A DNA stretch of 64,000 bases, from NCBI GenBank assembly GCA_043228905.1, contig JBHGNT010000012.1, positions 7,564,001 through 7,628,000 of the forward strand, written 5' to 3'. Positions 16,222 through 53,668 of this stretch are shown one piece after another; position 1 is the first letter of the stretch; each line of letters starts with the position of its first letter. This stretch comes from Azolla caroliniana. Taxonomy: Eukaryota; Plantae; Polypodiophyta. The position numbers and the translations under genes were made by a program. Below the pieces are notes generated by a model. That model had not been told where the DNA came from. It made no database searches and saw only the letters and a program-made list of their open reading frames with translations.

Positions 16222-19200
16222 ATGGCTCAAATTAACGACCCGATGTCATCCGCTCAAGCGGAAGGAACTCAAGGGAATCCTCCTGGACAAATGTCCACTG
16301 AGATGTATTTGGCACAAATAACCCAATACCTTAGTTTCACCGCTCAACAGATGACCGAACTTCGGCAATCTCAGAGTGCTCTTGAGGCACGTGTCATTAG
16401 TCTACAACGTGAGACTAATAGACCTGATGAGCGACAAGGTGAACCATCATTTGTCGTTAAGCCATTTACGGGAGACAAAAAGGAAAGAACCGAAGAAGCA
16501 ATCTGCACATGGCTGGGACGATGGGAGTCTCATTTTGAGCTCTATCCCACGCCAGATAGTACGAAGATTGCATATGTCGGCCGAGAACTCGGGGGTAAGG
16601 CCGCCGCCTGGTGGCGTGGCCTCCGTACTATGGGGAAATTGCCCGATACCTGGACATATTTTGTCACGGTTTTTAAGGGCCAATTTCTGCAACCTCCCTC
16701 TCGAACCGAGGCAGCACAAGCTTTAATGAACCTCTCTAGCAGGAAATTTTCCTCGCTAGAGGACTATGTTCACCATGCTAGAACCCAAATCCAAAAATCG
16801 GGTCTAGAAGGGGACAATTGGTTGATAGCTTGTTTTGTCAATGGCATCCCCAATTCAGACTATCACTGGATAGTGCACGATAAGGATCCAAAATCCTTCG
16901 AAGAGGTCGTTGAAATAGTTCTTCGCTATCAACGCACTTCGAAGAAGGACCATAACAAACCCAACGAAGCGCCCGGGACTAAGCAGTCGCAATTTGTTGG
17001 GAAACGCAAGACACCCAACGAATTCCTGGATCGCAATTGTAAGCGACAACATCCTTTTTGTGTATTCTGCAAAAAGAAGGGTCATACAAAAGATCAATGT
17101 CGAAAGCTCCAACGGAAAGAGCACGACAACAAAGCTAAAGCTGTAGACCATAAAGGTCAGATTCCTAATGTCCTTCAGGTCTATACACACCATTTAAGTA
17201 ATTGTCAATGTTCTTTTCCTCACTATGTATTGGGTCCCAATGATTTACTACGTGCAAACGGGTATATCAATGGATCTCCCGTACAATTTTTATTTGATTC
17301 GGGAAGCTCACACAATTTTGTGAATGATCGTTTGGTTCAGATATGGGGAATCCAACCCACCGTAAGTGATCACACCTACACGGTGCACTTGGCTGATGGA
17401 AGAGTACAATACATCAACGGGGCGATTCATTCATTAGGAATTTCTATTGATACTTATATAGAGGAAGTAGACTTCCATGTAATGAATCTTTGTACCACCG
17501 ATGTAATACTGGGTTATCCCTGGTTTTATAATAAAAACTCTTCTTTATTTATTGATTGGGTTCGTCATTCCATTTCTTTTGTACTGAACGATTGTACGCA
17601 TTTTATTCAATGTGTAAAAAAACAATCCCTCTCGATTGTTTCCTTGTGTCCATCAATATCCGAGTTGTCTTGTTCTACGCTATTTTATTGTGTACTTGAT
17701 CCGGACATTCACGTTTACAATATCGATAATGTCCCGATTCAATTAACATATTTTGAACAACAACAACTTGATGAAATCTTAAATGATTTTCATGATGTTT
17801 TTCCAAGTGAACTACCTGATGGGTTACCTCCTAAACGTAATATAGACCATCATATAGATATTGTACCTGGTGTTGCACCAATAAGTATACCTCTGTATCG
17901 CTTAAGTCGATCCGAAGAAGATGAGGTATCTAAGCAACTCAAGGACTATTTACGAATGGGTTATATACGTTATAGTAAATCTCCATGGGGTGCACCAGTT
18001 CTCTTGGTTAAAAAGAAAGAGGGCACATGGCGTATGTGTATTAATTACCGATGCTTGAATAAAGTGACGATCAAGAATTCGTATCCATTGCCCCGGGCTG
18101 ACGATCTAATTGACCGTCTCCAGGGAGCTCGGTATTTTACGAAACTTGATCTCCGTACTGGCTACCATCAAATACGAATAAGTGAGGACGATGTTCCTAA
18201 AACGGCATTTCGTACGCGCTATGGCCATTACGAGTTTTTGGTTATGCCTTTTGGTTTGACCAATGCTCCGGCTACTTTTCAACAAGAAATGAATGACATT
18301 TTCCGAGAACAACTTGGAAAATTTGTCGTTATTTTCTTGGATGATATTTTAGTTTATAGCCGTACATTACAAGAACATGCTAGACATGTCCGCTTTGTTT
18401 TACAAACATTGCGTGACAAACAGTTTTATGCGAAGATCTCAAAATGTGAGTTCTTCAAGAAATCAATTACTTATCTAGGACATCTCATAACCGAACGAGG
18501 AGTTGAAATTGATCCTTCTCGCATTGAGAAAATCAAGCTTTGGCCCACTCTTCGGAATATTCAAGAAGTTCGATCATTCCTTGGTTTTGTGGGGTTTTTG
18601 CGAAAGTCTCTTCGTAATTACTCCCAATTGATGATGCCGTTTACTGATCTTTTAAAAGGTCAAACGCGTAAGTCTACAAAACCTATTGTGTGGAATGCTA
18701 CACTAGACCTTGCATTTAAGGAACTCAAGGACCTAGTTTGCAAGGCTCCTTCACTTCTTTTACCTGATCCTTCAAAACCTTTTGAGGTTGAAACCGATGC
18801 AAGCGATTATGCTATAGGTGCTGTCTTGTATCAAGATGGTAAACCAATAGCATTCGAGAGTAAGAAACTTGATTCTGCTCAATGTCGGTATACCGTTCAA
18901 GAAAAGGAATTATTTGCAGTTATACATGCGCTCAAAACATGGCGCCATTATCTTTATGGAAATCACTTTGTGGTAACTACGGACCACGAGTCCTTGAAAT
19001 ATTTTTGTGACCAACAAGACCTGAAAGGTCGTAAGGCACGATGGGCTGATCTCATCCAGGACTTTGATTTTTCCATACGATATCGTAAAGGTTCCATGAA
19101 CATTGTCGCTGATGCACTAAGTCGCATCCGTGAAGTTAACACGCTTAGCTTCACTGAAATATCATCAGATCTTTATGATCACCTTCGAAGAAAGTATCCT

Positions 19201-19341
19201 GATGACAGTTATTTCGCAAAATACTGGGCAAGAGTTGAGTCTGGAATAGACACCATCCACATTGCTAACGGTTTGCTCTACCGTAATGGGAAGGTTTGTG
19301 TTCCACATTTACCCGAGGTCAAAAAGAGGATTCTTTTTTAA
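16222..19341 (+). CDS. Gag-Pol polyprotein of Gypsy-1, truncated by a premature stop
   Basis: 1039-aa ORF: [20 protein letters not shown] protease, [22 protein letters not shown] RNase H. TAA stands where sibling Gypsy-2 has GAA. Confidence 0.93.
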
Positions 19342-28570: not shown

Positions 28571-31500
28571 AAAACATATGCCTTTGTGGTTTGACCAATG
28601 CTCCGGCCACATTTCAACAAGAAATGAATGACATTTTCCGAGAAAAACTTGGAAAATTTGTCGTTATTTTCTTGGATGATATGCTAGTTTATAGTCATAC
28701 ATTAGAAGAACATGCTAAACATGTCCGCTTTGTGTTGCAAACATTGCGCGACAAGCAATTGTACGCGAAGATCTCAAAAAAAATGCGAGTTCTTCAAGAA
28801 ATGAATTACTTATCTTGGACATCTCATAATCGAACGAGGAGTTAAAATTGATCCTTCTCGTATCGAGAAAATCAAGCTTTGGCCCACTCTTTGGAATATT
28901 CGAGAAGTTTGATCATTCCTTGGTTTTGTCAAGTATTTGCGAAAATCCCTTCGTAATTACTCCCAATTGACGATGTCGTTTATTGATATTCTAAAAGGTC
29001 AAACGCTTAAGTCTACAAAACCTATTGTGTGGAATGCTACACTAGACCTCGACTTTAAGGGACTCAAGGACCTAGTGTGCAAGGCTCCTTCGCTTCTTTT
29101 ACCCGATCCTTCAAAACCTTTTGAGGTTGAAACCGATCCAAGAGATTATGCTATAGGTGTTGTCTTATATCAAGATGGTAAACCAATAGCATTCGAGAGT
29201 AAGAAACTTGATTCTGCTCAATGTCGGTATACCGTTCAAGAAAAGGAATTATTGGCAGTTATACATGCCCTCAAAACATGGCGCCATTATCTTTATGGAA
29301 ATCGTTTTGTGGTAACTACGAACCACGAGTCCTTGAAATATTTTTGTGACCAACAAGACCTGAAAGGTCGTAAGGCACGATGGGTTGATTTCATCCAGGA
29401 CTTTGATTTTTCCATACGATATTGTAAAGGTTACATGAACACTATCGCTGGTGCATTAAGTCGCATCCGTGAAGTTAACATGCTTAGCTTCATTGAAATA
29501 ACATCATATCTTTATGATCACCTTCGAGGAAAGTATCCTGATGACAGTTATTTTTCGAAATACTGGGCAAGAGTTGAGTCTAGTACAAACACCACCACAT
29601 CCTCGAAGGAATCCTTCCACATTGCTAACCATTTGCTCTACCGGAATGGGAAGGTTTGTGTACCAAATTTGCCTAAGGTCAAAAACAGAATACTTTTTGA
29701 ATGCCATGATGCACCCTCACTAGGGCACTCTAGAATACATCGTACACTCGTTCTCATCTCCACTCAATTCTATTGGCCTAAGATGCGTCCTGACATACAT
29801 AGCTATGTGACTAAATGTCACCAATGTCAGGTTAACAAAGCCGAGCAACTTAAAGCTGCAAGACTTTTACATCCCTCGGACATTCCCAATAATAAGTGGG
29901 AAAGTATATCCATGGATTTTATTGTTAGCCTTCCTCGCACCCAAAAAGGCCATGATGGCATCTGGGTTGTGGTTGATCGACTAACTAAAATGGCCAGATT
30001 TATTGCTACTAAAACCGCCGTAACAACTCCTGAATTGGCTTACCAATTCGTTGATGAGTTATTTCGTTTTTATGGGTTACCGATGGATATCGTGAGTGAT
30101 CGAGATCCAAAGTTTACTAATGACTTTTGGACGCAAGTCTTTAAGAAGTTAGAAACTACATTGAGCATGAGCTCCACAGATCATCCTCAATCCGATGGAT
30201 AGAGAAAACGAGTAAATCAAATTATTGAGGGCAAGTTCCGTGCATATGTTGGTACAAAACCAATAAAATGGGAACGTTATCTCCCAAATTTGGAGTTTGC
30301 TTATAACAGCTCCAAGCATACGTCGACAGGATATATTCCTTTTATGTTGATGTATGGTTTTCAGCCACGAGCCCCGATTGATGTTAATATACATCATGAT
30401 GAGTTGCGAAGTATGCAAAACTTTCTTTGGGATATGCAAGATATGTTGCATATTGCACGAGATAATATAAAAACAACTCAAGATAGAGCATGTTTTTACG
30501 TCGATCATAATAGGCAACCTCGTGTATTCAACCCTGGACAGAAAGTATATTTACGTGTACCTCACAATTCTAAGACATTGTCTACGGGTAAGTGCGCTAA
30601 GTTAGCCCCATGGTTTTGTGGACCTTTTATAATCCTCAAACGCATTGGTTCATCAACCTATCGTCTCGCTCTTCCTAATGGCGTTAAAATCCATCCAGTT
30701 TTTCATGTAAGTATTCTAAAAGAACTTCTTGGTTCCGGTGACAATACAATGACAACTGAAACTTTGGTTACTTTTGAAGAATTATCTTCTAAACAACATG
30801 TACCAGAAAGAATTCTCGATGTTAAAACAAAAAATTTGCGTACTAAAATAATCTGAGAATTTAAAATTAAATGGATGGATAATTCTATAAAAGATGCCAC
30901 ATGGGAACGTGAAAATACTCTTAGAACTAACTTCCCTAACTTTCCATTGCAAGAGTGCAATGTTTTAAAGACTTTTAATCCTCGGGATTGAGACAACCCA
31001 TGAGGCCAAGAGTGAACTTGGATGGGGGCCTTAGGTCTGGCTATAAATATGAGGCCTAGCTACCCTCATTTGACATTTCGACCACGTCCAGACTCTGATA
31101 GTGGTGGGTCAACTCTTGTAGCGAACGCGCTAGCACCAGGTACGACTCGACGCCACGACAATGGTATGGGACGCCGATCGAGGCTCGAGTCCGTCTCGAT
31201 CCCTTCGCTCGGGGGTGGTTAGGTGGATTGACACCCTTCTTTCTCTCTCTCCTTTCTTATTTATCTATGTTTTATCCTGATCATGTGCTTACATTAGATC
31301 ATCACTCTAACAAGAGACCTACAAAAGTTGATTGAAACATATGAGTTTGAATCGGTTGACCTTCAGCAACCGATCGACATGTATGAATGCGAGCCAAGTG
31401 AAGTGTCAGAAGACACATCCGAACCTTAGCCGACTATGGGAGGTGGAAATATCCACTCAGACAAAGGAGAGAACCCTCACGGTACGCCAATCAATATGTT

Positions 31501-35925: not shown

Positions 35926-36110
35926 GTGAGCCGTGTGGGGCGGTTTCGGGACGTCTCTCTCTGTCGCTGAGAGTATATAATAAGAAGAGAGGAATTTTAC
36001 TCACTATATATGTATATATATATAGAGAGAGAGAGACGCTCTCTCTCTCCCCTCCCCTGTTCCCGGCGTCTCTATCTCTGCACAAATCTTCTTCGTGGGC
36101 GTTTTCCCCC

Positions 36111-36152
<42 letters not shown>

Positions 36153-36301
36153 ATCCCATCCATTCATCTTGTATTACATTCGCCCACATACATACATACA
36201 CACAGAGACAGAGACAGAGACAGAGACAGAGACAGACAGAGAGACAGAGACAGAGAGAGATAGGTAGCTCCTCAGAGGTCTCCACCTCCTCTACTACCCC
36301 C

Positions 36302-39300
36302 ATGTCGGAAAGCGCCGCCCCTGCCTCTTCCTCCTCCTCCTCTGGAAGAGGGAGATTGCCACGTCCTCCTCAGAATCGTCGCCCTGCTTCTGCTTCTGCT
36401 TCTTCTTCCTCCGCCCCTGCTAGACCTGAAGCTTCAGGTACGCTGCTACCAAATCCTTCTCCTGTCTCGAGTTTCTCCTCGCAGGATGTGAGGCGGCTTG
36501 ATCCCACACAGATGGATGGTTCCAGAAGATTACAGACATTGAGCGCTGGCAGCCCTACTATTTCCGACCGGCAAGCGAACCCGAGGAGTTATGTGGGGGG
36601 AAGTAACTCTAGGAGTCGCGATGAGCAAGGAGACAGGAATCATAACCCTAGGATTCCTCAGGGGCAAGGAGAAAGGATCCCGAGGAATCAGGACGTTTCA
36701 AGAAACCCTAGGAATCATTCAGAGGAAGAAAACCCTGGGAATCATGGGGCACAAGGAAACCCCCGGAATCACCTGGTACACGAAAACCGGTCTGGCAGGA
36801 GACGAGGAGGCCATACTATACCTGATTACAACAGCACAAACAACAATAATAATAAAGGCGGTGAAGGAACATCCGGAGATAATCAGCCCTTTAGAAAGGG
36901 GAACTATCGGAGGATTATTGTATCCGAAGGTGTTGCAGAAAGTAGTAGTATAGCAGAACCTAGGCATGAAGGTCCCAGTGAGGCAAGGTCTGAACGAAAA
37001 ATTGATGATTATGATAATAATGATAACACATCTAGTAGAATGTCTACCCAAGATGGCTGGGCAAACCACCACCAGCACCCGAGGAGGTCACGAGGAACAA
37101 GAAGTCGAATAGGCGAGGATCAACAGAAAGTGGGCGTTGGTGCACCTATAAGACAACAATGGCTGCCATCAAATTTGAATAGTAGAAGAGATCCATCTCA
37201 TGCTGTTGATCAATCTGAGACTGGCTCGTCCTATCAGGCAGTTTCTCGCGTAGATGGTGTTTCTGATACCATCCGAGATGGCCGTTCTCCTTCTCAGGCC
37301 AATAGCATCAATGTGGATCCTCTCGAGGCACTAGAAGCTTCTCGGGGGGCTGTTGAGGAGGCCCTTCAGAGTATCTCCATATCCCGAATGCAAAGACAAA
37401 ATCCGGAGATCAACATAGCAATGCAACATGTCCAACAATTCGCTCCAGATGTCGCGAAGCTACCAAACCCTCAAGGGATTGGCCGAAATATGGATATGCG
37501 GAGACAAAGAAACACTCTGAAACCTAGGGAAAACCACCGTGAAGATGCATCAATCAATAGAGGCGCAAAAGTAATTACGAAACCAATACCGAACAACAAT
37601 GCTCCTTTGCTTGTCCAAGAGCTTGAGGAGAAGCTGATCAAAGGGAAAGTAGAATGCATGATATGCTATGATAGCGTTAGAAGAGAGGCGGCCGTATGGT
37701 CTTGTGGAGGCTGCTATGCTATTTTTCATATAGCTTGCATCAAGAAGTGGGCTAGGGCACCGATCTCAGCTGATTTTTCTATCACATCTTCGGAACAAGT
37801 GACAACTGGAAATTGGAGGTGTCCGGGTTGCCAAGCTCCTCAATTTCTGGGCGCCGATGAGATTAATTATAGATGCTTCTGTGGGCAAATTCCACACCCT
37901 CAAGTGGATTACTACCTCACACCTCATTCATGTGGTGGTCCTTGCAAAAAGTCTCTAAGCTCAGCTAAGAATCCTCATTGTAGGCATGTATGTACGATGC
38001 AATGCCATCCAGGGCCTTGCCCTCCTTGCAATGCATTGGCTCCCCCTCAGTTTTGCCCGTGTGGGAAAACAAGCTATACACAAAGATGCTCGGAGCTTAA
38101 GAGTCCCAAATGTTGTGGTCAGATTTGTGGCCGGCCATTGCAATGTGGGCGACACTATTGTGAGAAGGTATGCCATGATGGCTCATGTGGAACGTGCAAC
38201 GCTCTATTGACAGTAAAATGTTTTTGTGGAGGTATGAAAGAAAGCATGTTTTGTGGTTCTATGGATTTGCAAGGGGAACTGGATTGGGAAAACGGTGTTT
38301 TCTCATGTCAGAACTCTTGTGTAAAGTATCTCAAGTGTGGGAAGCACACTTGCAAAAAGCAATGCCATCCTGGAGAGTGTGGACAGTGTGAATTGTCTCC
38401 CGAGAGGCTTCATACATGTCCATGTGGCAAAGTTTCGATTCAAAAGCTGTTGGGACCTGGGAGGCGGAGAGACAGTTGCACTGATGAAGTTCCTCTGTGT
38501 GGGAACATTTGCGAGAAGCCACTTCCTTGTGGCAAGCATTTCTGCCAGAGCTTGTGCCACATGGGCGATTGTCCAAAATGTGAAGTCGAAGTTGAGCAAA
38601 AATGTAGATGCCAATCAACATCTCAAAGGATGCCATGTCACAAAGGTTGGACCATGGAGGGTGAGAGGAAAGCATCAAAGGGCAAGGAAGATGATGAAAC
38701 AGAATTGTTTTTATGTAATCGAACATGTGGGAAGAAAAAGAACTGTGGGAGGCATAGGTGTAGCAATAAATGTTGCCCATTAGCCAATAAAGAGAATATC
38801 TTGGAGGAGGATAATCCTCATATTTGCTTATTGTTATGTGGCAAGAAATTAAGGTGTGGTCAACATACTTGCGAAGAAACGTGCCACAATGGACACTGCC
38901 CACCATGCTTAGGCTCGACGTTTACAGAGCTCACATGTGCATGTGGTAAGACATCCATCCCACCCCCTGTACCCTGTGGTACATTCCCTCCATCATGTCC
39001 ACACCCATGCTCTCGTCCGCAACCGTGTGGCCATGCTGCCACTCATCAATGCCACTTTGGAGATTGCCCTCCTTGTATTGTCCTTGTGGCTAAGGAATGT
39101 GTGGGGGGCCATGTTGTCCTAAGGAATGTGCCTTGTGGTTCTAAGGATATAAAATGCAACACATTGTGTGGGAAAACAAGACAGTGTCAATTACATGCTT
39201 GTGCTCGGCTGTGTCATTTGCCTCCTTGCGATGTTGTACTGATGGATGCCCCGGATGGTAAGATAATGAGCTGTGGACAACAATGTGGGGCTCCTCGCCG

Positions 39301-40564
39301 TGATTGTCAACATGTATGTGTTTCCATTTGCCATCCTGGGACACTTTGCCCCGAGACAAGATGCAAGTTTCCAGTCACTATATTTTGTTCTTGTGGTCGT
39401 TTGTCTCAACAAGTGCCTTGTGATGCTGGGGAGAGTTCCAAGAGGAATGATTCACTGGAGCTTGCCTATTACTCTAGTCTTCGATTACAACCTATGGATG
39501 GGAAGGTTAGAATTCCTCTTGGTCAGAGGACCTTGGCATGTGATGAAGAATGTGCTAAGATGGAGAAGAAGCGTATCCTCGCTGATGCTTTTGGTGTAAC
39601 AGAAACAACCATTGATATCTCGGCAGAGAGTATTCATGATGCTTCTGATACTCTAAGAGAGCTACTCAAGAAGGATCCACAATGGGTGCTTTCCGTTGAG
39701 GATCGATTTAAGTATCTTGTTCTTGGTGTAAAGTCAGTTAATGCTGGGCCAATTCGTGTCCATGTGTTCAAAGTTTTACCAAAGGAGATGCGAGAAGTGA
39801 TAAGACAAATAGCTGAGAAATGGAACCTTTCTGTGAGTGGGGTGGGTCGGGAACCAAAAAGATTCCTAACTGTGTACACAAACCCAAAAACAAAGGCTCC
39901 TCCGATGAGAGATCTCTTTGCAAAGTCACCCCTTCCTCTCCCGGGCCAAGCTCAGGCGCCAATGTTCAACCCTTCCTTGGATATGGACCCTCGGCTTGTA
40001 GTGGGTCTTTTCGAGCTACCCAGAGATGCAGACATAAGCTCATTGGTGCTAAGGTTTGGTGGTGAGTGTGAACTTGTGTGGCTGAATGATAGGAATGCAT
40101 TGGCGGTGTTCTCTGACACTGCGAGGGCGGCCACTGCGATACGAAGGGTGGATCATGCCTCAGTTTACAGTGGTGCAGTTAAGATGATGCCTTTTCACTC
40201 TGTGGATAGCAGTAGTGGTCGAGGGAGCAGCAGTTTGAAATGGCCAGCACGAAAGTTTAAGGGTGGCCATGAAGAATCATCATCATCGAGTTGGTCAGAA
40301 GATGCATGGGGAGAAGAGTTGGGAAGTGCTAATCAATTGAGTAATGTTGTTTGGAATAGAGGAGGTCCTGCTATTACATCTGTGAATCCATGGGGAGCTT
40401 TGGATGAGTCTTCGAATACTGTTAGGAATCGGGATAAAGCCATTGTTGGTGGCAATAATAGTACTAATCATCGGGACAAAACTAATAGCGTAGATGCAGT
40501 TGCAACCATTCAGCCAAGGATTCTTAATTCTCCTGCGGACGACTGGGAAGAGCTGGAGGGTTGA
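36302..40564 (+). CDS. NFXL1: NF-X1-type zinc finger protein NFXL1 (intronless, ~1420 aa)
   Basis: ECMICYD..WSC..CYAIFH..CIKKWA..WRCPGC RING/PHD, tandem NF-X1 fingers (CGxHxCxxxCHxGxCxxC), R3H-like region (GREPKRF) and LVLRFGGECELVWLND C-terminal block. First in-frame ATG at 36302. Confidence 0.96.
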   Translation: MSESAAPASSSSSSGRGRLPRPPQNRRPASASASSSSAPARPEASGTLLPNPSPVSSFSSQDVRRLDPTQMDGSRRLQTLSAGSPTISDRQANPRSYVGGSNSRSRDEQGDRNHNPRIPQGQGERIPRNQDVSRNPRNHSEEENPGNHGAQGNPRNHLVHENRSGRRRGGHTIPDYNSTNNNNNKGGEGTSGDNQPFRKGNYRRIIVSEGVAESSSIAEPRHEGPSEARSERKIDDYDNNDNTSSRMSTQDGWANHHQHPRRSRGTRSRIGEDQQKVGVGAPIRQQWLPSNLNSRRDPSHAVDQSETGSSYQAVSRVDGVSDTIRDGRSPSQANSINVDPLEALEASRGAVEEALQSISISRMQRQNPEINIAMQHVQQFAPDVAKLPNPQGIGRNMDMRRQRNTLKPRENHREDASINRGAKVITKPIPNNNAPLLVQELEEKLIKGKVECMICYDSVRREAAVWSCGGCYAIFHIACIKKWARAPISADFSITSSEQVTTGNWRCPGCQAPQFLGADEINYRCFCGQIPHPQVDYYLTPHSCGGPCKKSLSSAKNPHCRHVCTMQCHPGPCPPCNALAPPQFCPCGKTSYTQRCSELKSPKCCGQICGRPLQCGRHYCEKVCHDGSCGTCNALLTVKCFCGGMKESMFCGSMDLQGELDWENGVFSCQNSCVKYLKCGKHTCKKQCHPGECGQCELSPERLHTCPCGKVSIQKLLGPGRRRDSCTDEVPLCGNICEKPLPCGKHFCQSLCHMGDCPKCEVEVEQKCRCQSTSQRMPCHKGWTMEGERKASKGKEDDETELFLCNRTCGKKKNCGRHRCSNKCCPLANKENILEEDNPHICLLLCGKKLRCGQHTCEETCHNGHCPPCLGSTFTELTCACGKTSIPPPVPCGTFPPSCPHPCSRPQPCGHAATHQCHFGDCPPCIVLVAKECVGGHVVLRNVPCGSKDIKCNTLCGKTRQCQLHACARLCHLPPCDVVLMDAPDGKIMSCGQQCGAPRRDCQHVCVSICHPGTLCPETRCKFPVTIFCSCGRLSQQVPCDAGESSKRNDSLELAYYSSLRLQPMDGKVRIPLGQRTLACDEECAKMEKKRILADAFGVTETTIDISAESIHDASDTLRELLKKDPQWVLSVEDRFKYLVLGVKSVNAGPIRVHVFKVLPKEMREVIRQIAEKWNLSVSGVGREPKRFLTVYTNPKTKAPPMRDLFAKSPLPLPGQAQAPMFNPSLDMDPRLVVGLFELPRDADISSLVLRFGGECELVWLNDRNALAVFSDTARAATAIRRVDHASVYSGAVKMMPFHSVDSSSGRGSSSLKWPARKFKGGHEESSSSSWSEDAWGEELGSANQLSNVVWNRGGPAITSVNPWGALDESSNTVRNRDKAIVGGNNSTNHRDKTNSVDAVATIQPRILNSPADDWEELEG

Positions 40565-45617: not shown

Positions 45618-46115
45618 GCTTGTATTTGCTTGATTGTTTGGTTACATAATTCGTTAAAAATTTAATTAAAAATGAAAAGTCAGCAAAATCTCACATAAGA
45701 GTTTGTATTTGCTTGATTGTTTGGTTACATAGTTCGTTAAAAATTTAATTAAAAATGAAAAGTCAGCAAAATCTCACATAAGAGCTTGTATTTGCTTGAT
45801 TGTTTAGTTACATAATTCGTTAAAAATTTAATTAAAAATGAAAAGTCAGCAAAATCTCACATAAGAGCTTGTATTTGCTTGATTGTTTAGTTACATAATT
45901 CGTTAAAAATTTAATTAAAAATGAAAAGTCAGCAAAATCTCACGTAAGAGCTTGTATTTGCTTGATTGTTTGGTTACATAATTTGTTAAAAATTTAATTA
46001 AAAATGAAAAGTCAGCAAAATCTCACATAAGAGCTTGTATTTGCTTGATTGTTTGGTTACATAATCGTTAAAAATTTAATTAAAAATGAAAAGTCAGCAA
46101 AATCACACATAAGAG
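45618..46115. repeat. Tandem repeat, 6 x 83 bp, AT-rich
   Basis: ttgtatttgcttgattg recurs at 45620, 45703, 45786, 45869, 45952 and 46035; near-identical units. Confidence 0.95.
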
Positions 46116-47133: not shown

Positions 47134-50100
47134 TCAACCAGAAGAAGGATATACACTGCAGCACAAGGGGTTATCAAGCTGAAGTATCTGATCAAAAGTC
47201 ATTCTTCCAAGCTCCACATTCAGCCATTTTCTACAAGCACTCAACAATGCAAGCTGAAGATCACAAGATGGCATCATGTTGATAATCGAAAATGCTGCGC
47301 CAAACTGCCCAGCAGATCCTAAACCCACCACCATGCAAGTGTAGTGCTCTAATTTTGGAGTAATATTGTATTTCTTGATCATATTCTCAAAAAGAATTTG
47401 AGTTTCAATCAACAGACCTGAGTGACAACAGGCATTCAAAACGCATAGGAAAGCAACTTCATTCGGTAAGATTCCCTCATTTTGTAGGCATTCAAAACAC
47501 GCCAATGCATTTGCCCCTTGTCCTTGTTGAGCATGCCCTGTGATTAGTGAGGTCCACACTATGACATCCCGGAAAAGAAGTCCATCAAGCAATTCATGTG
47601 CTTTCTGAACCATACCACATTTAGAATACATATCCACTAACGCATTGCAAAGTGCAATATTCTCCTCAAACAAGCCCCTAGTCAAAATTTCCTCATGAAT
47701 TTCCTTTCCCTTGTCTATAGCTCCTATGTTCCCACATGCCTTTAAGATACAAATGAAGGTGACAGCATCTGGAGAGTGACCCTCTCTTTGCATTCTCTCA
47801 AAGCAGTTCAGTGATTCATGAAACTTCTCTTGCTGTGAGTATCCTGTAATTAATGTGGACCAAGTAACTGTATCTCGAGTAGGAAGCCCATCAACTACCT
47901 CTTGTGCTTTTACAAGCACACCACATTTGGCATACATATCCACCAAAGCATTGCCGAGAACAAGATCTTTCTTCAGCAAAGCTCGCACCTCAATTTCCTC
48001 ATGAATTTGTTGGCCCCTGTCTATAGCACCTATAGTGCCACACGCCTTCAAGATACAAGAGAAAATGACCTCATCAGGAGGTATTCCCTCACTTTGCATT
48101 TGCTCGAAACAGTTCAATGCTGCATCGCATTGCCCTTGTTCGGCATAGGCTGCAATTAGAACATTCCATGTGATTGCATCCCGAATAGGAAGCTCTTCAA
48201 GCACCTGTTGTGCTTTGGCAACCAAACCACATTTCCCATACATATCCACCAAAGCAGTACCTAGGACGATATCTTTGTTCTTCATAAAGCCATTCCTCAC
48301 AATCTCATCATGAATTTTTTTGCCTTTGTCTATGGCTCCTATATTACCACAAGCCTTCAAGATGCAGATTAAGGTGATTGCGTCTGGTGAAAAACCCTCA
48401 CTTTGCATTTCCTCAAAAGTTTTCACTACCTCATAGAATTGCTCATGTTCAGCATATCCTGCAATAAGAGTGTTCCATGTGACTTCATTCCGGTCAGGAA
48501 GCTCGTCAATCACTCTTCGTGCATTCACAAGCATGCCACATTTGACATACATATACACCAAAGCGTTGCCAAGCATAGTATCTGTTTTCAAAAGACCACT
48601 CTGTATAATCTTTTCATGAACTTCTTTGCCCTTGCTGAGAGCTCCTATGGTCCCGCAAGCCTTCAAGATGCAAATGAAGGTGATTGTGTCTGGAGAGAAG
48701 CCCTCGTTTTTCATTTGTTCAAAGCATATGAGGGCTTGATATCCTTCTCCTTGTTGAGCATACCCTGCTATTAGTGCAGACCAAGAGACTACATCTCGTT
48801 TTGGAAGCTCTTCAAGAACCTCTTGTGCCTTAACAAGCATACCGCACTTGGCATACATATCCACCAAAGCAGTTCCAAGCATACAATCCGTCTCCAGAAA
48901 GCCCCTAGATACGATCTGTTTGTGAATTTTCTTGCCCTCACTCAGCGCTCCAATGTTGCCACATGCCTTTAAAATGCAAGTAAAAGTGATTGCATTTGGG
49001 GAGAAACCCTTACTTTGCATTTGATAATAACAATTCAATGCTTCCTCCCCTTTTCCATGCTGTACGAACCCTGCAATCAAAGCAGACCATGAAACTACAT
49101 CCTGATAAGGAAGTCCTTCAATGACTTCTTGTGCTTTTGAAAGAGCCCCACATTTGGCATACATATGGATTAAACTGCTTGCTACATAACGACTCCTTTC
49201 CAGTAAACCTTTTCTCAAAATATCAGCATGTAGATTAGTGCCTTTGCAAAGATCCTTGTTTTTGGCACATGCTTTGAGTAAGGTCACAATAGCAAAATCC
49301 TCCTTATAATTTTCAATTCTAATCACCTTTTCATGATTTTTATTCACCTTGGACATCACAATTGTTGTTCTCCTCAACTCTTCATAAACCCATGAAGGAT
49401 TGTACCATTCCCCAAGGTACAAAGACTCGTCAATAATTTTGTGCCCAAAATCTGGGAATTTCGTGCACTAATACAAAGAGCAAAAGAGAGGTTGAATGAG
49501 AGTCCATTTCGAGGTTTTCCTCACATGCGGATGGCTTTATTTTAGTTAGGGAGGCAGCTATGCTATGTCTGATACCAAATGTTATAGCTCAAAGCGTGGA
49601 ACAAAGTTTTTATAATTCATGTTTAACACACTTGTGGGGCAAGCTTATTCAGATAATTATCCATCCTATCTGCATTACTACTTGGATGTTACACTGGGTT
49701 TGTTGAATTATATTAAGCACTGACACCTCATCAATCCATATGGTAGGGTTGCAGAATAGCTACTCATAATTTGCTATTGCAAAATGTACACTCTAAGAAT
49801 ACATGTATGTGGGGATAAACTTACAGCTTGGGGTTGGTCATTGATTCTAACAACCTATGGTGCACCTGAAGTCTTACTGGAGGCAACCCTTTACCAGAAA
49901 TATATTAGCCTCCATTTGGACAATTGGTTGCATCAGCCCTATTCAATTACATAATAGTTATCTTGCTCTCATGCTAATATACTTGTGTTTCGGAGGTGTA
50001 GAGCTCTTACCTTAAGGTATTGCCACAAGTGGGATCATGGTCAAAATTCTGAATTCAACAAGCAATAAGGAGTGCAACATCTACGTATCAATCAGAAATG

Positions 50101-52912
50101 CAATGTGGAAGATCATCCACATAAAACAAATTGATAATGACACATGTAGAACGTTCAAAACAGATGGAGAAATCATTTGTCAAATATTTGTGTTCCCACA
50201 CCTCTATTTCATCAGCATGTAACACTTGCAATTTCATGCAGGGGCATAATATACTCAACCATAGTGAGCGTAGGAAAAGAACAAATTGAGTGCACACCAG
50301 TTCTGCCACCTAGCTGAAATCTAAGGAGATAAAAAAACAAACCAGTATGACCTACAAAAAGGGATTGTATCTCATATGGACACCATACCAGATCCATGTG
50401 GTTGAGGGTGAGGAACATTTCAAGATCAAATGCACCACATCTGTTGATATAGGGGCACAGTTCCACTAACCGATACACAATGCAACAATCTTCAATTTTT
50501 TTGGCAGTCAGCAAGAGGAAACTGTCTCCTGCAATAGATCACAGACCTGATTGACATGGAAATTCTAGTGTCACAAACATAGGAACTGATCTATGCGCAG
50601 AAAAAATCACCCATGAACTACATATCTAAGTCAAATGCTCCCCTTCTTGTCCATCAAAAAGAGAATTCTACCATGTAAGTATTTTCTACTCCAGGTCCCA
50701 TGAGCCGTCCCATTAGGGTCATCACTTGGCAACCATGGTGAGAACCAATGAAAGACAATGAGTTGATTTTTTCTCACCTTTTGATATTGTATTAAGAAAT
50801 CTCCACTGACATTAATAGAGCACAGTTCCACCGCCACGTATCTATGCCCACAGTAAGAGATGCCACCATATTGCCATTGTCGATATCCTAATACTGCCAA
50901 TGGTGCCATTGCCATTGGGCTGTGGACGAGATTTGAGGCACATGATAACCATGCCAATGATTGATAGCCATCAGGCGAGAACCGTGTGGTCATCCAGTCG
51001 AGCCAGGCCAAGTGATAATCGGGTCGATGGTCAATGGTCAATTACCAATATGAGAAAAAAGCCAATAACAAAGAGCCGAGTGATGGCCAATAGTCAGGCT
51101 CAGAATTCCGGATGAGCGAATGAAGGAACAACTATTTTTGCCGATAGACAGGCTGAGGATTCCGGACGAGCGATGGAGGATGAGTATGAAGATGAATATC
51201 GAGGATGACCATAAAGAGGAGAGTGAAGATGAGGGTGAAGAACGGATCAAGAGAGAATAAAGAGCGAGACAATGGAGAATAAAGAAAGGATCATAATATA
51301 AATACAGAGAAGGTGTGATTGACATGCACCCTTAGCCTAATGGGCAAGGCTCATGATGGTGTGTCAAGGGAATTGTGGGATCAAGTGCTTCAAAGAAGTT
51401 ATCCCGCAAACGTATCAGGACTTATCCATCCAACCAACTCTCCCAATGGAGTTGGGACATTGTGTAACTATGAGATCCTTAGTTACCCAGGTATTTTGTA
51501 ATCTATCCCATTCTTAAAGTACATGCAATCAGTCAATTCATCTAATCAAAACTTGGGCAACAGTCAAGACCAAAAGCCTATAAAAAGCCTTTCAGGTCTC
51601 TCTCTTTCATTAATAAAAGTATTATATTGCTCATCTCTCGTTCTCTTTTCGCAGGTTATAATGGAGAAGATTTGGTTTGACGTACAAACATTATACTGGT
51701 GTTTTGTGGATTTCAACAAGGCTTTCACCACATTCCCAATACTAAGTAGAAGAATGGAAGTCGGCAAAGCCCATTACAAGAAGTATTGGAGAACATGTGC
51801 CACTCACGCACAACCGGATGATGGAGAACTCTTGTATATCTAATTGAGGGTTTGGGTGAGACAGTATTTCATCAAGCTCAAGGCATGCAATGGAAAAAAC
51901 AAAAAAAAAGTTTTTCTAAGCCACCATTCATGGGTAGCACAACACTGTTCACCATAATGCTCAAGAAAATGGAAGAGAGCCAATACACTTTTACGCACTT
52001 CACAGAGTTTACAAGCACATATTGAAAGGAGGAACAATGACCCAAAATCACCTCCTCAAGGCCGCATCTGAAATTAGATGCTTACAACGAAAAAACCACA
52101 GAAGCAAATTTCTTTTATCTAGCTGGGTTCAAGACATCCAGAAACGGTCTGCAAAATAGCATGTGGAAGAATGCTTGAATGTGCATGTAGAAGAGAGGAA
52201 AGGAACAGGGGAAACATGAGTCCATGTTTTTACTCAGCACAGATGATTAATTTCTGAATGGTTCAAGACAAGTTAAGCTCTCCACATGAAGTGGGGAATA
52301 GCCCAACCTCGCTGTAAATTTGAATACAAATTTGGGAAATTTACAGAAGCTAGTTGGCCAATGCACAAGAGGATATCCATAGCTAGCATCCGGACATCCA
52401 TACCCAAGAGGGCAGCGAGATGTGCCATCACTCTAACGCTAACACACATGGAAAAAAAATAGGAATCATGGGGTAGCTGAACATTTGTGTGAAAAAAAAG
52501 AGAGATTTTGCTTGACCTATATGTTGCTTCATTTGCAAACCAGAAATATAAGAGCATGTCACACTGGATGATGTGCTGCTCACATATGAGGACAGTAGGA
52601 ATGATTTCCTCAAAAAACACAAGGTTGCCCTAACGTTCGTGAACTCTTAATTATTATGAAGACAGATCCATTACTGGAAAGACTAGGCATGATCATGCTC
52701 TTTTTGGCTTGTCCATTCAAACACAGACATTTTCGAGAACTAGGTTAGTTTTTTTTCATTCTGTTTTCAGGCAGTAAGTACATATGTTTCTTCTTTGGCT
52801 CCACTTGTTTGAGATTCTGACATTACAAGGCTGGGAAGAGCGTGATTGATTGGTTTCATCACCATTAGCATCAGGATCATCATCATCATCTTCTTCTTCT
52901 TCTTCTCTTATG

Positions 52913-52958
<46 letters not shown>

Positions 52959-53080
52959 CACATAGTTCTTACCTTCTTCGTCTTCTTCTTGCTAGAATTG
53001 ATGGTGTGCCAGAGGGAAGGGTCTCTGAAGTAGTGCTTCCACAGGAGGTCCATCTCTCTGCTTCGCTGTGATCTCGCCAT
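47134..53080 (-). CDS. PLS-class PPR protein with an N-terminal OSB-type PDF motif; truncated E domain, no DYW
   Basis: Exon 53080-52973 (AAG|gtaaga) splices phase 0 to exon 49467-47134 (ctttgtattag|TGC), giving 813 aa. Six L-S-P triplets (last P is P2), then L2-S2 and a degraded E1. A further in-frame exon 53274-53223 (with acceptor at 53103) is possible. Confidence 0.88.
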
Positions 53081-53668
53081 GGAATCATAGCCGGTTGATA
53101 TGCCTGACGAACAAGGGACCAAGGGCATACACAGCAAGAGTATCAAGATTCAAAAGCATAAAAAGCATAAAAAGCTAAAATCACCCCTCGCATTTTAAAA
53201 TTGTCAGAATTCCGAAAGCATACCCTTTCGGTTTGTGAAATTTCTCAGACCTACCCTTTCTTGTGTCCCTCCCATTCCAAAGTACTATACTATACAAGTA
53301 AACATCGGAATGCGTTGGTGCAGAGATCGGCAAAAAGCGCACCGATCTCTGTGTTTACAGATTTGCTGCTGCTCTCGCTCTCTTTTAATCCAACCGGAGA
53401 AATATATGGACAGCCCTAGTCGGAGCAGGGAAAACTTCATCATAACTTCTGCAGCGATGGGTGGAATCCGAGTTCCTAGTTAAGATCAAAAGAAATCTTC
53501 ACATTTTTCTATCAAAAACTCAGTCGCAGAGAATGGCTGCGCCATGCTTGCATTCGGACATACCCTACATCCTTACATCCCTTGCAAAGTCGTCTCTTTG
53601 CAGGTTCGCTTCTCACCATGTATTATATAATGTTCTGTTTTTGTATCTTCCACTTTGCTTCCCCTTCA

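What the first reader, a model, noticed from the sequence alone, without database searches (positions are those of the whole stretch)
49375..53080. OSB-type PDF (ssDNA-binding) motif fused to a PLS-PPR array, hidden across a 3.5-kb intron
Seen: the 762-aa PPR ORF is called from a TTG and is closed upstream by a polypyrimidine AG acceptor (49468-49490). An exon at 53080-52973 with a strong donor splices in frame and gives LWKHYFRDPSLWHTINSSKKKTKK|CTKFPDFGHKIIDESLYLGEWYNPSWVYEEL. Established: this follows the PDF motif of plant organellar ssDNA-binding proteins (OSB1-4/pTAC9), LW-x3-F-x-[ND]P-x2-W...K...PDFKHK-x3-E-x-LWL...P-x-W-[VI]-x3-L, which in OSBs lies C-terminal to an OB fold and mediates ssDNA binding. 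Inference: an exon-shuffled chimera joining an ssDNA-binding module to a sequence-programmable RNA-binding PLS array. It could act where RNA meets ssDNA (R-loops, transcription bubbles, nucleoids) or use the motif as an interaction tag. I do not know of a functional description of this architecture, but it may already be present unannotated in non-seed-plant proteomes.
Basis: partly seen in the sequence, partly recalled or inferred. Interest (0 to 1): 0.88.

Follow-up and report, generated by a model that had tools for sequence, protein, structure and literature searches.

The report
Fern PPR gene with OSB-type motif
This fern gene for an RNA-reading PPR protein really begins, across a 3.5-kb intron, with a worn copy of the small motif that plant organelle DNA-maintenance proteins (OSBs) use to hold single-stranded DNA. 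The pairing is an old, apparently undescribed gene family, not a one-off.

Summary
A profile built only from PDF motifs of OSB proteins, run over all 3,193 six-frame segments of the window, picks the two proposed exons as its top two hits (E 8.8e-5 and 6.6e-4; next best 1.4). They cover complementary halves of the motif (positions 28-54 and 4-28).

- **Splice sites:** transcript-like contigs of relatives about 95% identical end exactly at 49467 and 52973. No listed contig bridges exactly 52973 to 49467.
- **Homology:** the exon-2 half alone retrieves NCBI-named OSB3 proteins from 1.84 billion proteins.
- **Family:** N-terminal PDF plus a PLS-PPR array also occurs in Adiantum, Ceratopteris, Sphagnum and several transcript contigs.
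- **Intron:** the phase-0 intron lies where it does in a Sphagnum PDF-PPR gene and in the PDF repeats of a Lupinus OSB3 gene.

This copy is worn. Three of eleven conserved PDF residues are replaced, and the protein ends in a frameshifted E1 motif with no E2 or DYW. One relative carries a 15-nt deletion in the motif and an out-of-frame splice. The PPR frame is still under purifying selection.

What the motif does here is untested. Four literature searches found no paper on the architecture. The scan reported this architecture before on other DNA of this genome.

The parts
52973..53080 (-). Exon 1 coding part: ATG plus 36 codons. Residues 11-35 (53050-52976) form the first half of the PDF motif (LW-x3-F-x-DP-x2-W, then a K-rich loop).
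   Evidence: sequence. (OSB-only profile, E 6.6e-4, profile 4-28). (X1 record 8 covers 52973-53139 and starts exactly at 52973).
52967..52972 (-). Splice donor GTAAGA, immediately followed by a (GA)n microsatellite (52914-52955).
   Evidence: Contigs end at 52973.
49468..52972 (-). Phase-0 intron of 3,505 nt. It holds no Pfam-recognisable ORF. By eye it contains a reverse-transcriptase-like fragment on the + strand (51523-51843).
   Evidence: Depth is near zero across 50000-52799.
49468..49495 (-). Pyrimidine-rich tract and acceptor. The AG is at 49469-49468, and the TAG at 49470-49468 is also the in-frame stop that closes the ORF upstream.
   Evidence: X1 record 6 ends exactly at 49467.
49375..49461 (-). 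Second half of the PDF motif, at the start of exon 2: P-D-F-G-H-K, S-L-Y-L, N-P-S-W-V.
   Evidence: E 8.8e-5, profile 28-54. (this piece alone retrieves OSB3 proteins from 1.84e9 proteins).
47134..49467 (-). Exon 2: 777 codons plus stop. It comprises the PDF second half, a linker of about 25 aa, a PLS-class PPR array (DNA period 306 nt, 5.2 copies) and a partial E1 motif.
   Evidence: PPR 1.3e-87, 15 stretches; PPR_2 3.5e-95. (period 306). (19 synonymous and 19 non-synonymous differences; codon positions 11/6/21).
47134..47181 (-). Damaged C-terminus. After Q-L-D the homologous reading continues in another frame (C-A-A-V-Y-I-L..., matching L002 and P0001). The used frame stops after 13 more codons. 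No E2 or DYW remnant lies downstream.
49354..49356 (-). First internal ATG of exon 2 (residue 38). It is a possible alternative start that would give a PPR protein without the motif.
   Evidence: Unspliced contigs cross the acceptor, and there is a 52973-to-49399 join in a relative.

Best explanation
**Shown**
- This is a two-exon nuclear gene for a PLS-class PPR protein of 813 aa (36 + 777).
- Its first 70 residues carry one divergent PDF motif, the roughly 50-aa module otherwise known from organellar ssDNA-binding (OSB) proteins. The motif is assembled by removing a 3,505-nt phase-0 intron.
- The gene belongs to an old family. Members from the moss Sphagnum to the ferns Adiantum and Ceratopteris have a short leader, one to three PDF motifs and a PLS array ending in an E-type tail without DYW.
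- The intron lies at the place where PDF-coding units are split in a Sphagnum PDF-PPR gene and a Lupinus OSB3 gene. This fits a PDF exon pair that was moved as a unit.

**Inferred, about 0.3 for the specific mechanism**
- The PPR array reads a specific organellar RNA.
- The PDF module holds the protein on single-stranded nucleic acid of the nucleoid, such as the non-template strand or replication and recombination intermediates. RNA processing or editing-site recognition would then happen next to the DNA.
- With no DYW domain, any editing would need a deaminase supplied in trans.

In this copy the motif is worn: D to T, R to N and W to Y at conserved positions. Its nucleic-acid affinity may therefore be weakened or changed.
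For: - **Profile test:** the two exons are the top two hits of an OSB-only PDF profile among 3,193 segments, with complementary halves. Profiles from PPR-linked and OSB-linked motifs give the same two top hits.
- **Retrieval of OSBs:** the exon-2 half alone retrieves OSB3-named proteins of Chenopodium (P0012), a Lupinus cluster (P0004) and an SSB-domain protein with two PDFs (P0011). It also retrieves a 3xPDF-PPR transcript, P0010.
- **Family:** PDF-PPR proteins in Adiantum, Ceratopteris and Sphagnum score 48-70 bits on the OSB-only profile, all at the N-terminus, and all lack DYW.
- **Intron:** it is shared with Sphagnum PDF-PPR and Lupinus OSB3, and L002 has it too.
- **Transcripts:** contig ends lie at both splice sites.
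- **Selection:** half of 38 listed differences are synonymous, and 21 fall at third codon positions.
- **Literature:** the PDF motif of OSB1 is reported sufficient for ssDNA binding (PMC6963530, citing Zaegel 2006; PMC13393729).
Against: - No listed contig bridges exactly 52973 to 49467.
- One relative's contig joins 52973 to 49399, out of frame, and lacks the five codons P-S-L-W-H. Others read unspliced through the acceptor.
- Two of seven invariant and one of four near-invariant PDF positions are replaced. The two halves together score about 36 bits, against 48-70 for canonical PDF-PPRs.
- The leader before the motif is only 10 residues, short for an organelle presequence.
- The C-terminus is frameshifted and truncated.
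- No experiment or structure links PDF in a PPR context to DNA. The PDF model has no solved structural relative.
Confidence: 0.7

Rival explanations
1. Relic motif. The gene descends from a PDF-PPR ancestor, but in this lineage the motif no longer works. The active product is the PPR array alone, translated from the internal ATG at 49356 or carrying an inert N-terminal tail. Exon 1 then acts mainly as a 5' leader.
For: - Conserved D, R and W are replaced, and the profile scores are low.
- In a relative about 95% identical, a 15-nt deletion removes P-S-L-W-H, and the only bridging contig is spliced out of frame to 49399. X3 record 22 and X9 record 31 read through the acceptor.
Against: - Both halves remain in frame, with an intact donor and acceptor.
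- The second half is about as conserved between the window and L002 (P-D-F, H, S-L-Y, N-P-S-W, E-E-L) as the PPR array, which is 55-59% identical.
- In organism A the contigs end at the in-frame sites.
Confidence: 0.25
2. The motif is functional but is not an ssDNA anchor. In PPR proteins it would serve as a protein-protein contact (for example to OSBs, editosome partners or a deaminase), as an extra RNA-binding surface, or as part of targeting.
For: - It always sits at the extreme N-terminus, where PPR proteins carry targeting or partner-binding segments.
- The family lacks DYW and so would need partners.
- The model is a small helix-hairpin-helix unit with no known DNA-binding fold match.
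Against: The only reported activity of the motif is ssDNA binding in OSB1 (PMC6963530). Canonical PDF-PPR motifs keep all residues that are invariant in OSBs.
Confidence: 0.3
3. Transcribed pseudogene. The whole locus is decaying after losing its E2/DYW end.
For: There is a frameshift and truncation inside E1 with no E2/DYW remnant downstream. The motif is worn.
Against: - A 777-codon frame is intact.
- Differences from relatives are half synonymous and enriched at third codon positions. The rough dN/dS is about 0.3, from a listed subset only.
- Other family members also end just after E1/E2.
Confidence: 0.1
4. Chance resemblance and a false exon.
For: Each half is short and scores only 17-20 bits.
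Against: - The halves are the top two of 3,193 segments.
- They are complementary in the profile, on the same strand, in the right order, flush with a GTAAGA donor and a pyrimidine-AG acceptor, and in matching phase.
- Contig ends lie at both sites.
- The same architecture occurs elsewhere.
Confidence: 0.02

Closest known systems
OSB proteins (OSB1-4 of Arabidopsis; OSB2 = pTAC9), organellar ssDNA-binding proteins
   Same: They share the PDF motif, including the P-D-F triad, the leading W, the K-rich loop and the P-x-W-V end. A Lupinus OSB3 gene has the same phase-0 intron 5 residues before P-D-F.
   Different: This gene has no OB-fold or SSB-like domain. The motif is N-terminal rather than C-terminal, and a PPR array replaces the OB fold. 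The conserved D, R and W are replaced.
PLS-class, E-type PPR proteins (organellar RNA-editing site-recognition factors)
   Same: It has a PLS triplet array of about 102 aa period and an E1-like end. Its nearest relatives are ordinary-looking PLS proteins (P0001 54%, L002 55-59%).
   Different: It carries an N-terminal PDF motif, its E1 is truncated by a frameshift, and it has no E2 or DYW. L002, the nearest relative with DNA in hand, continues into E2 and the start of a DYW-like domain.
Unnamed PDF-PPR proteins in public proteomes: Adiantum capillus-veneris P0028, A. nelumboides P0030, Ceratopteris richardii P0033, Sphagnum compactum P0034, transcripts P0010 and P0025
   Same: The layout is the same: short leader, PDF, linker, PLS array, no DYW. 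The Sphagnum gene has the same intron position.
   Different: Those motifs are canonical (48-70 bits), whereas this one is divergent (about 36 bits summed over two halves). Identity over the PPR array is only 28-35%. The two Adiantum genes are intronless. P0010 and P0025 carry three motifs.

Membership tests
OSB (organellar ssDNA-binding) family | Central OB-fold or SSB-like domain | tested here: not met
   Pfam finds only PPR and TPR-type families in exon 2 and nothing in exon 1. By contrast P0011 hits SSB at 9.1e-10.
OSB (organellar ssDNA-binding) family | One or more PDF motifs | tested here: met
   An OSB-only profile ranks the two exons first and second among 3,193 segments. The reverse search retrieves OSB3 proteins.
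OSB (organellar ssDNA-binding) family | High-affinity ssDNA binding and organellar location | not testable with these tools
   This needs gel-shift assays and localisation. The leader before the motif is only 10 aa.
PDF motif (as a module) | Positions that are invariant or nearly invariant in 34 canonical motifs: W, D, R, K, P-D-F, K, L-W, W | tested here: inconclusive
   Eight of eleven are kept: the leading W, the loop K, P-D-F, the K after H, the L, and the W of P-x-W. Three are replaced: D to T, R to N and W to Y. L002 shares the W to Y change.
PLS-class PPR proteins | Tandem P, L and S-type PPR motifs | tested here: met
   PPR 1.3e-87 with 15 stretches and PPR_2 3.5e-95. The DNA period of 306 nt fits one PLS triplet.
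PLS-class PPR proteins, DYW or E+ editing subclass | E1-E2 motifs and a DYW deaminase domain | tested here: not met
   The frame ends inside E1 after a frameshift, and no E2 or DYW is found in any frame downstream.
PDF-PPR family (unnamed) | N-terminal PDF motif directly followed by a PLS array without DYW | tested here: met
   The layout matches P0028, P0030, P0033, P0034, P0029, P0031 and P0032.
PDF-PPR family (unnamed) | Phase-0 intron 4-5 residues before P-D-F, in the members that have an intron | tested here: met
   In the window it lies 4 residues before P-D-F, in L002 5 and in Sphagnum L006 5. The Adiantum genes are intronless.

The most novel reading that the evidence does not exclude
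PDF-PPR proteins may be a non-seed-plant device that couples sequence-specific RNA recognition to the DNA template. The PDF module would hold a PLS-type site-recognition factor on single-stranded DNA of the organelle nucleoid, so that editing-site or processing-site recognition occurs co-transcriptionally. The family would have arisen by moving the split PDF exon pair from an OSB-type gene onto a PPR gene before mosses and ferns diverged.
Probability: 0.2. Interest if true: 0.8.

Novelty: new variant of a known kind. Interest (0 to 1): 0.55.

Why it matters
PPR proteins are the main sequence-specific RNA readers of plant organelles. OSBs are guardians of organelle DNA stability. A conserved natural fusion of the OSB nucleic-acid module to PLS arrays would suggest that some RNA-site recognition factors are tethered to DNA or nucleoids. 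That idea can be tested in Ceratopteris or in a transformable moss if it carries a family member.

No Pfam model matched the motif in any protein scanned here, so domain annotation did not flag the architecture. Public records name these proteins plain PPR or hypothetical proteins.

This copy is a poor first test object because its motif and C-terminus are worn. It does, however, show the family's ancestral split-motif gene structure.

Tried and rejected
- **Word-indexed protein searches:** the exon-2 N-terminus as a region of the 777-aa frame gave one hit without the motif. As a 110-aa query of its own it gave no candidates. These are blanks of that index, not evidence of absence.
- **Solved structures:** sequence searches with the exon-2 N-terminus and with a 34-motif profile gave nothing meaningful. 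The only hit was a chance CP29 match at E 0.75.
- **Fold searches:** an AlphaFold model of a canonical PDF (pLDDT 86) matched nothing in Foldseek pdb at E <= 0.001. The wide VIA search gave a best Z of 2.9. No fold relative was found.
- **Lineage test:** I asked whether the halves fit PPR-linked PDFs better than OSB-linked ones. The scores are similar, so there is no discrimination.
- **Literature access:** supplementary tables of the 2026 OSB survey are not held. The primary OSB1 paper (Zaegel 2006) is not held, so its claims are cited through PMC6963530 and PMC13393729.
- **Literature on the architecture:** searches combining PDF motif or PDF domain, or OSB, with pentatricopeptide or PPR found no paper on it. 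The run id of P0010 is named in no held paper.
- All tests were done exon by exon, by reference.
- **P0002:** this top hit is a low-complexity repeat protein matching the linker, not the motif, and was discarded.
- **Not attempted:** no complex prediction was run, because the report makes no protein-protein claim.
Full report
**What is in the sequence**

On the minus strand an open frame runs from 49467 to the stop at 47136-47134, 777 codons. ORF-listing runs it from TTG 49422. The in-frame TAG at 49470-49468 ends a pyrimidine-rich tract and provides an acceptor AG.

Upstream, ATG 53080 opens 36 codons that end at 52973, directly before GTAAGA. Both boundaries are phase 0, and the intron is 3,505 nt. 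The wording of the finding is therefore correct at the given coordinates. An in-frame stop lies at 53152-53150, so 53080 is the first ATG of the frame.

**Is it more than chance?**

Simple patterns for the two motif halves each occur once in all six frames of the 64-kb window, at these two places.

For a proper test I needed real OSB motifs. A phmmer search of the first 57 residues of exon 2 against 1.84 billion representative proteins gave 11 hits at E <= 0.001. They include:
- P0012, named by NCBI 'protein OSB3, chloroplastic/mitochondrial-like' of Chenopodium quinoa.
- P0004, whose cluster holds Lupinus OSB3-like isoforms.
- P0011, which has a Pfam SSB domain (9.1e-10) followed by two PDF motifs.

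From the 12 PDF motifs of these three OSB proteins I built a profile. I ran it over all 3,193 stop-to-stop segments of the window.
- The exon-2 segment is the best hit (E 8.8e-5, profile positions 28-54, residues 3-31).
- The exon-1 segment is second (E 6.6e-4, profile 4-28, ending one residue before the donor).
- The third hit has E 1.4.

The two halves are complementary, on the same strand, in the right order and in matching phase. Profiles built separately from PPR-linked and OSB-linked motifs give the same two top hits. Chance is excluded for practical purposes.

**Splicing evidence**

Only assembled contigs of public runs were available, and their record does not say whether they are RNA. 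They behave like RNA. The exons are covered and the intron between 50000 and 52799 is almost empty. The best pieces are about 95-96% identical to the window, so they come from relatives or homeologues. Organism C is about 99% identical over part of the ORF but has no coverage of exon 1.

- In run X1, a 455-letter contig matches 49043-49467 and stops exactly at the predicted acceptor, with 30 further letters unplaced.
- Also in X1, a 171-letter contig starts exactly at 52973 and runs to 53139.
- In run X2, one contig joins 52973 directly to 49399. That is 68 nt inside exon 2 and out of frame. The same contig lacks 15 nt that encode P-S-L-W-H of the motif.
- X3 record 22 and X9 record 31 read unspliced across the acceptor. 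X2 record 15 overlaps it by only 14 letters.

Both splice sites are therefore used as boundaries in transcripts of a close relative. The exact in-frame junction was not displayed, and at least one relative has a damaged version.

**The architecture elsewhere**

P0010 is a 1,371-aa product of a single 4,755-nt transcript contig, L001. It carries three canonical PDF motifs (68-70 bits each on the OSB-only profile) followed by a PLS array and an E motif.

Using its PDF region as query, with the length filter favouring long proteins, I found PDF-PPR proteins in several annotated genomes plus transcript-derived proteins:
- Adiantum capillus-veneris (P0028).
- A. nelumboides (P0030).
- Ceratopteris richardii (P0033).
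- Sphagnum compactum (P0034, a cluster of 25 members).

Each has one PDF motif of 48-70 bits near the N-terminus, starting at residue 10-50, or at 111 in Sphagnum. Each ends shortly after an E1/E2-type tail without DYW. Public names are 'hypothetical protein' or plain pentatricopeptide repeat protein.

The window's PPR array is only 28-35% identical to those proteins. Its nearest relatives in hand are P0001 (54%, no motif in the model) and contig L002 (55-59%). In L002 the same second half of the motif again starts right behind an acceptor.

**Intron position**

| Gene | Exon junction | Residues before P-D-F | Phase |
|---|---|---|---|
| Window | ...K-T-K-K / C-T-K-F-P-D-F | 4 | 0 |
| L002 | acceptor / N-D-C-K-L-P-D-F | 5 | 0 |
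| Sphagnum PDF-PPR (L006) | ...H-R-S-E-K / V-N-A-R-Y-P-D-F | 5 | 0 |
| Lupinus OSB3-like (L005), PDF repeats | ...N-R-S-N-K / K-N-E-K-G-P-D-F | 5 | 0 |

The one-residue difference in the window lies in the length-variable loop. There exon 1 ends in an AAG-rich run.

The Chenopodium OSB3 gene has no intron inside its motifs. The two Adiantum PDF-PPR genes are intronless, because their gene ranges equal the coding length. A split PDF unit shared by OSB and PPR genes fits an exon-borne module that was moved between genes, with later intron losses. That is an inference, not a demonstration.

**State of this copy**

An alignment of 34 canonical motifs has seven invariant positions: the D of W-W-D-N-R, P-D-F, the L-W of A-L-W-L, and the W of P-x-W-V. 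Four more are near-invariant: the leading W, R, K and K.

The window keeps eight of the eleven. It replaces D by T, R by N and W by Y. L002 shares the Y. The two halves sum to about 36 bits, against 48-70 for canonical family members.

At the other end, the reading frame leaves the homologous frame just after Q-L-D (47181-47173). The sequence matching L002 and P0001 continues in another frame. The used frame stops 13 codons later, and nothing like E2 or DYW follows. L002 continues into E2 and the beginning of a DYW-like domain.

The 777-codon frame is nevertheless intact. Of 38 listed differences from the relatives' contigs, 19 are synonymous and 21 lie at third codon positions. This indicates purifying selection, with a rough dN/dS of about 0.3 from a listed subset only. 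I therefore read the gene as functional, with a worn motif, rather than as a pseudogene.

**Mechanism**

What is shown is the architecture and its age. What is known from the literature is that the PDF motif of OSB1 suffices for ssDNA binding and that OSBs restrain recombination in organelle genomes.

The most likely reading is that the PPR array recognises an organellar RNA, while the PDF module holds the protein on single-stranded nucleic acid of the nucleoid. I give this specific mechanism about 0.3.

The rivals are a relic motif in this lineage (0.25), a partner-binding or RNA-binding role for the motif (0.3), and a transcribed pseudogene (0.1).

A canonical PDF folds with confidence (pLDDT 86) into helix, hairpin, helix. 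It has no solved relative by sequence or by fold, so structure gives no functional hint.

The leader before the motif is only 10 residues, so organelle targeting of this copy is not evident from the sequence.

**Novelty and context**

Four literature searches combining the motif or OSB with PPR terms found no description of the architecture. Pfam matched no family over the motif in any protein scanned here.

The scan's own notes list at least five followed-up PDF-PPR loci elsewhere in this genome, which they call a fern genome. I used them as leads. I re-derived the family's spread and the intron conservation independently here. I did not test the species assignment.

Noticed in passing
P0003 (Effrenium voratum), P0005 (Sanguina aurantia), P0027 (JGI), P0026 (Kingdonia uniflora): Proteins made almost only of 5-13 tandem PDF motifs, with no recognisable OB fold in Pfam. 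They occur in a dinoflagellate, a chlorophyte snow alga and an angiosperm. The motif is therefore wider than the 'plant-specific OSB' label and is not tied to the OB fold.
   Followed up: partly
window 16222-19341 (+) and 28937-30202 (+): Ty3/gypsy-type retrotransposon reading frames: one with gag, protease, reverse transcriptase and RNase H, and a second with RNase H and integrase.
   Followed up: partly
window 36095-40564 (+): A long ORF of 1,489 aa with NF-X1-type zinc fingers and an NFXL1 RRM-like domain. It is probably an NF-X1-like transcription factor gene or its large exon.
   Followed up: partly
window 45618-46115: A tandem array of an 83-nt unit, 6 copies at 97% match, about 1 kb downstream of the PPR stop codon. 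The lost E2/DYW part of the gene would have lain upstream of it.
   Followed up: no
window 51523-51843 (+), inside the intron: An ORF containing a reverse-transcriptase-like stretch (C-F-V-D-F-N-K-A-F) but no Pfam hit. It is possibly a decayed retroelement that helps explain the intron's length.
   Followed up: partly
window 52914-52955: A perfect (CT)21 microsatellite, (GA)n on the gene strand, starts 18 nt into the intron after the donor. It is followed by GAA and GAT repeats. Read mapping was reported as cut there.
   Followed up: no
window 53006-53020 and 49399-49467, in run X2 (organism B): A relative's transcript contig lacks 15 nt encoding P-S-L-W-H of the motif. It joins exon 1 to a site 68 nt inside exon 2, out of frame. 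This may mean the motif is being lost in that lineage.
   Followed up: partly
L002 2700-2966: The nearest relative with DNA in hand continues past E1 into E2 and a DYW-like start. There the usual H-S-E triplet reads N-E-E, so it may be a degenerate or variant deaminase domain.
   Followed up: no
Gene ranges of P0028 and P0030: The two Adiantum PDF-PPR genes are intronless, whereas the window, L002 and the Sphagnum gene keep the intron inside the motif. The family therefore has at least two gene-structure lineages.
   Followed up: partly
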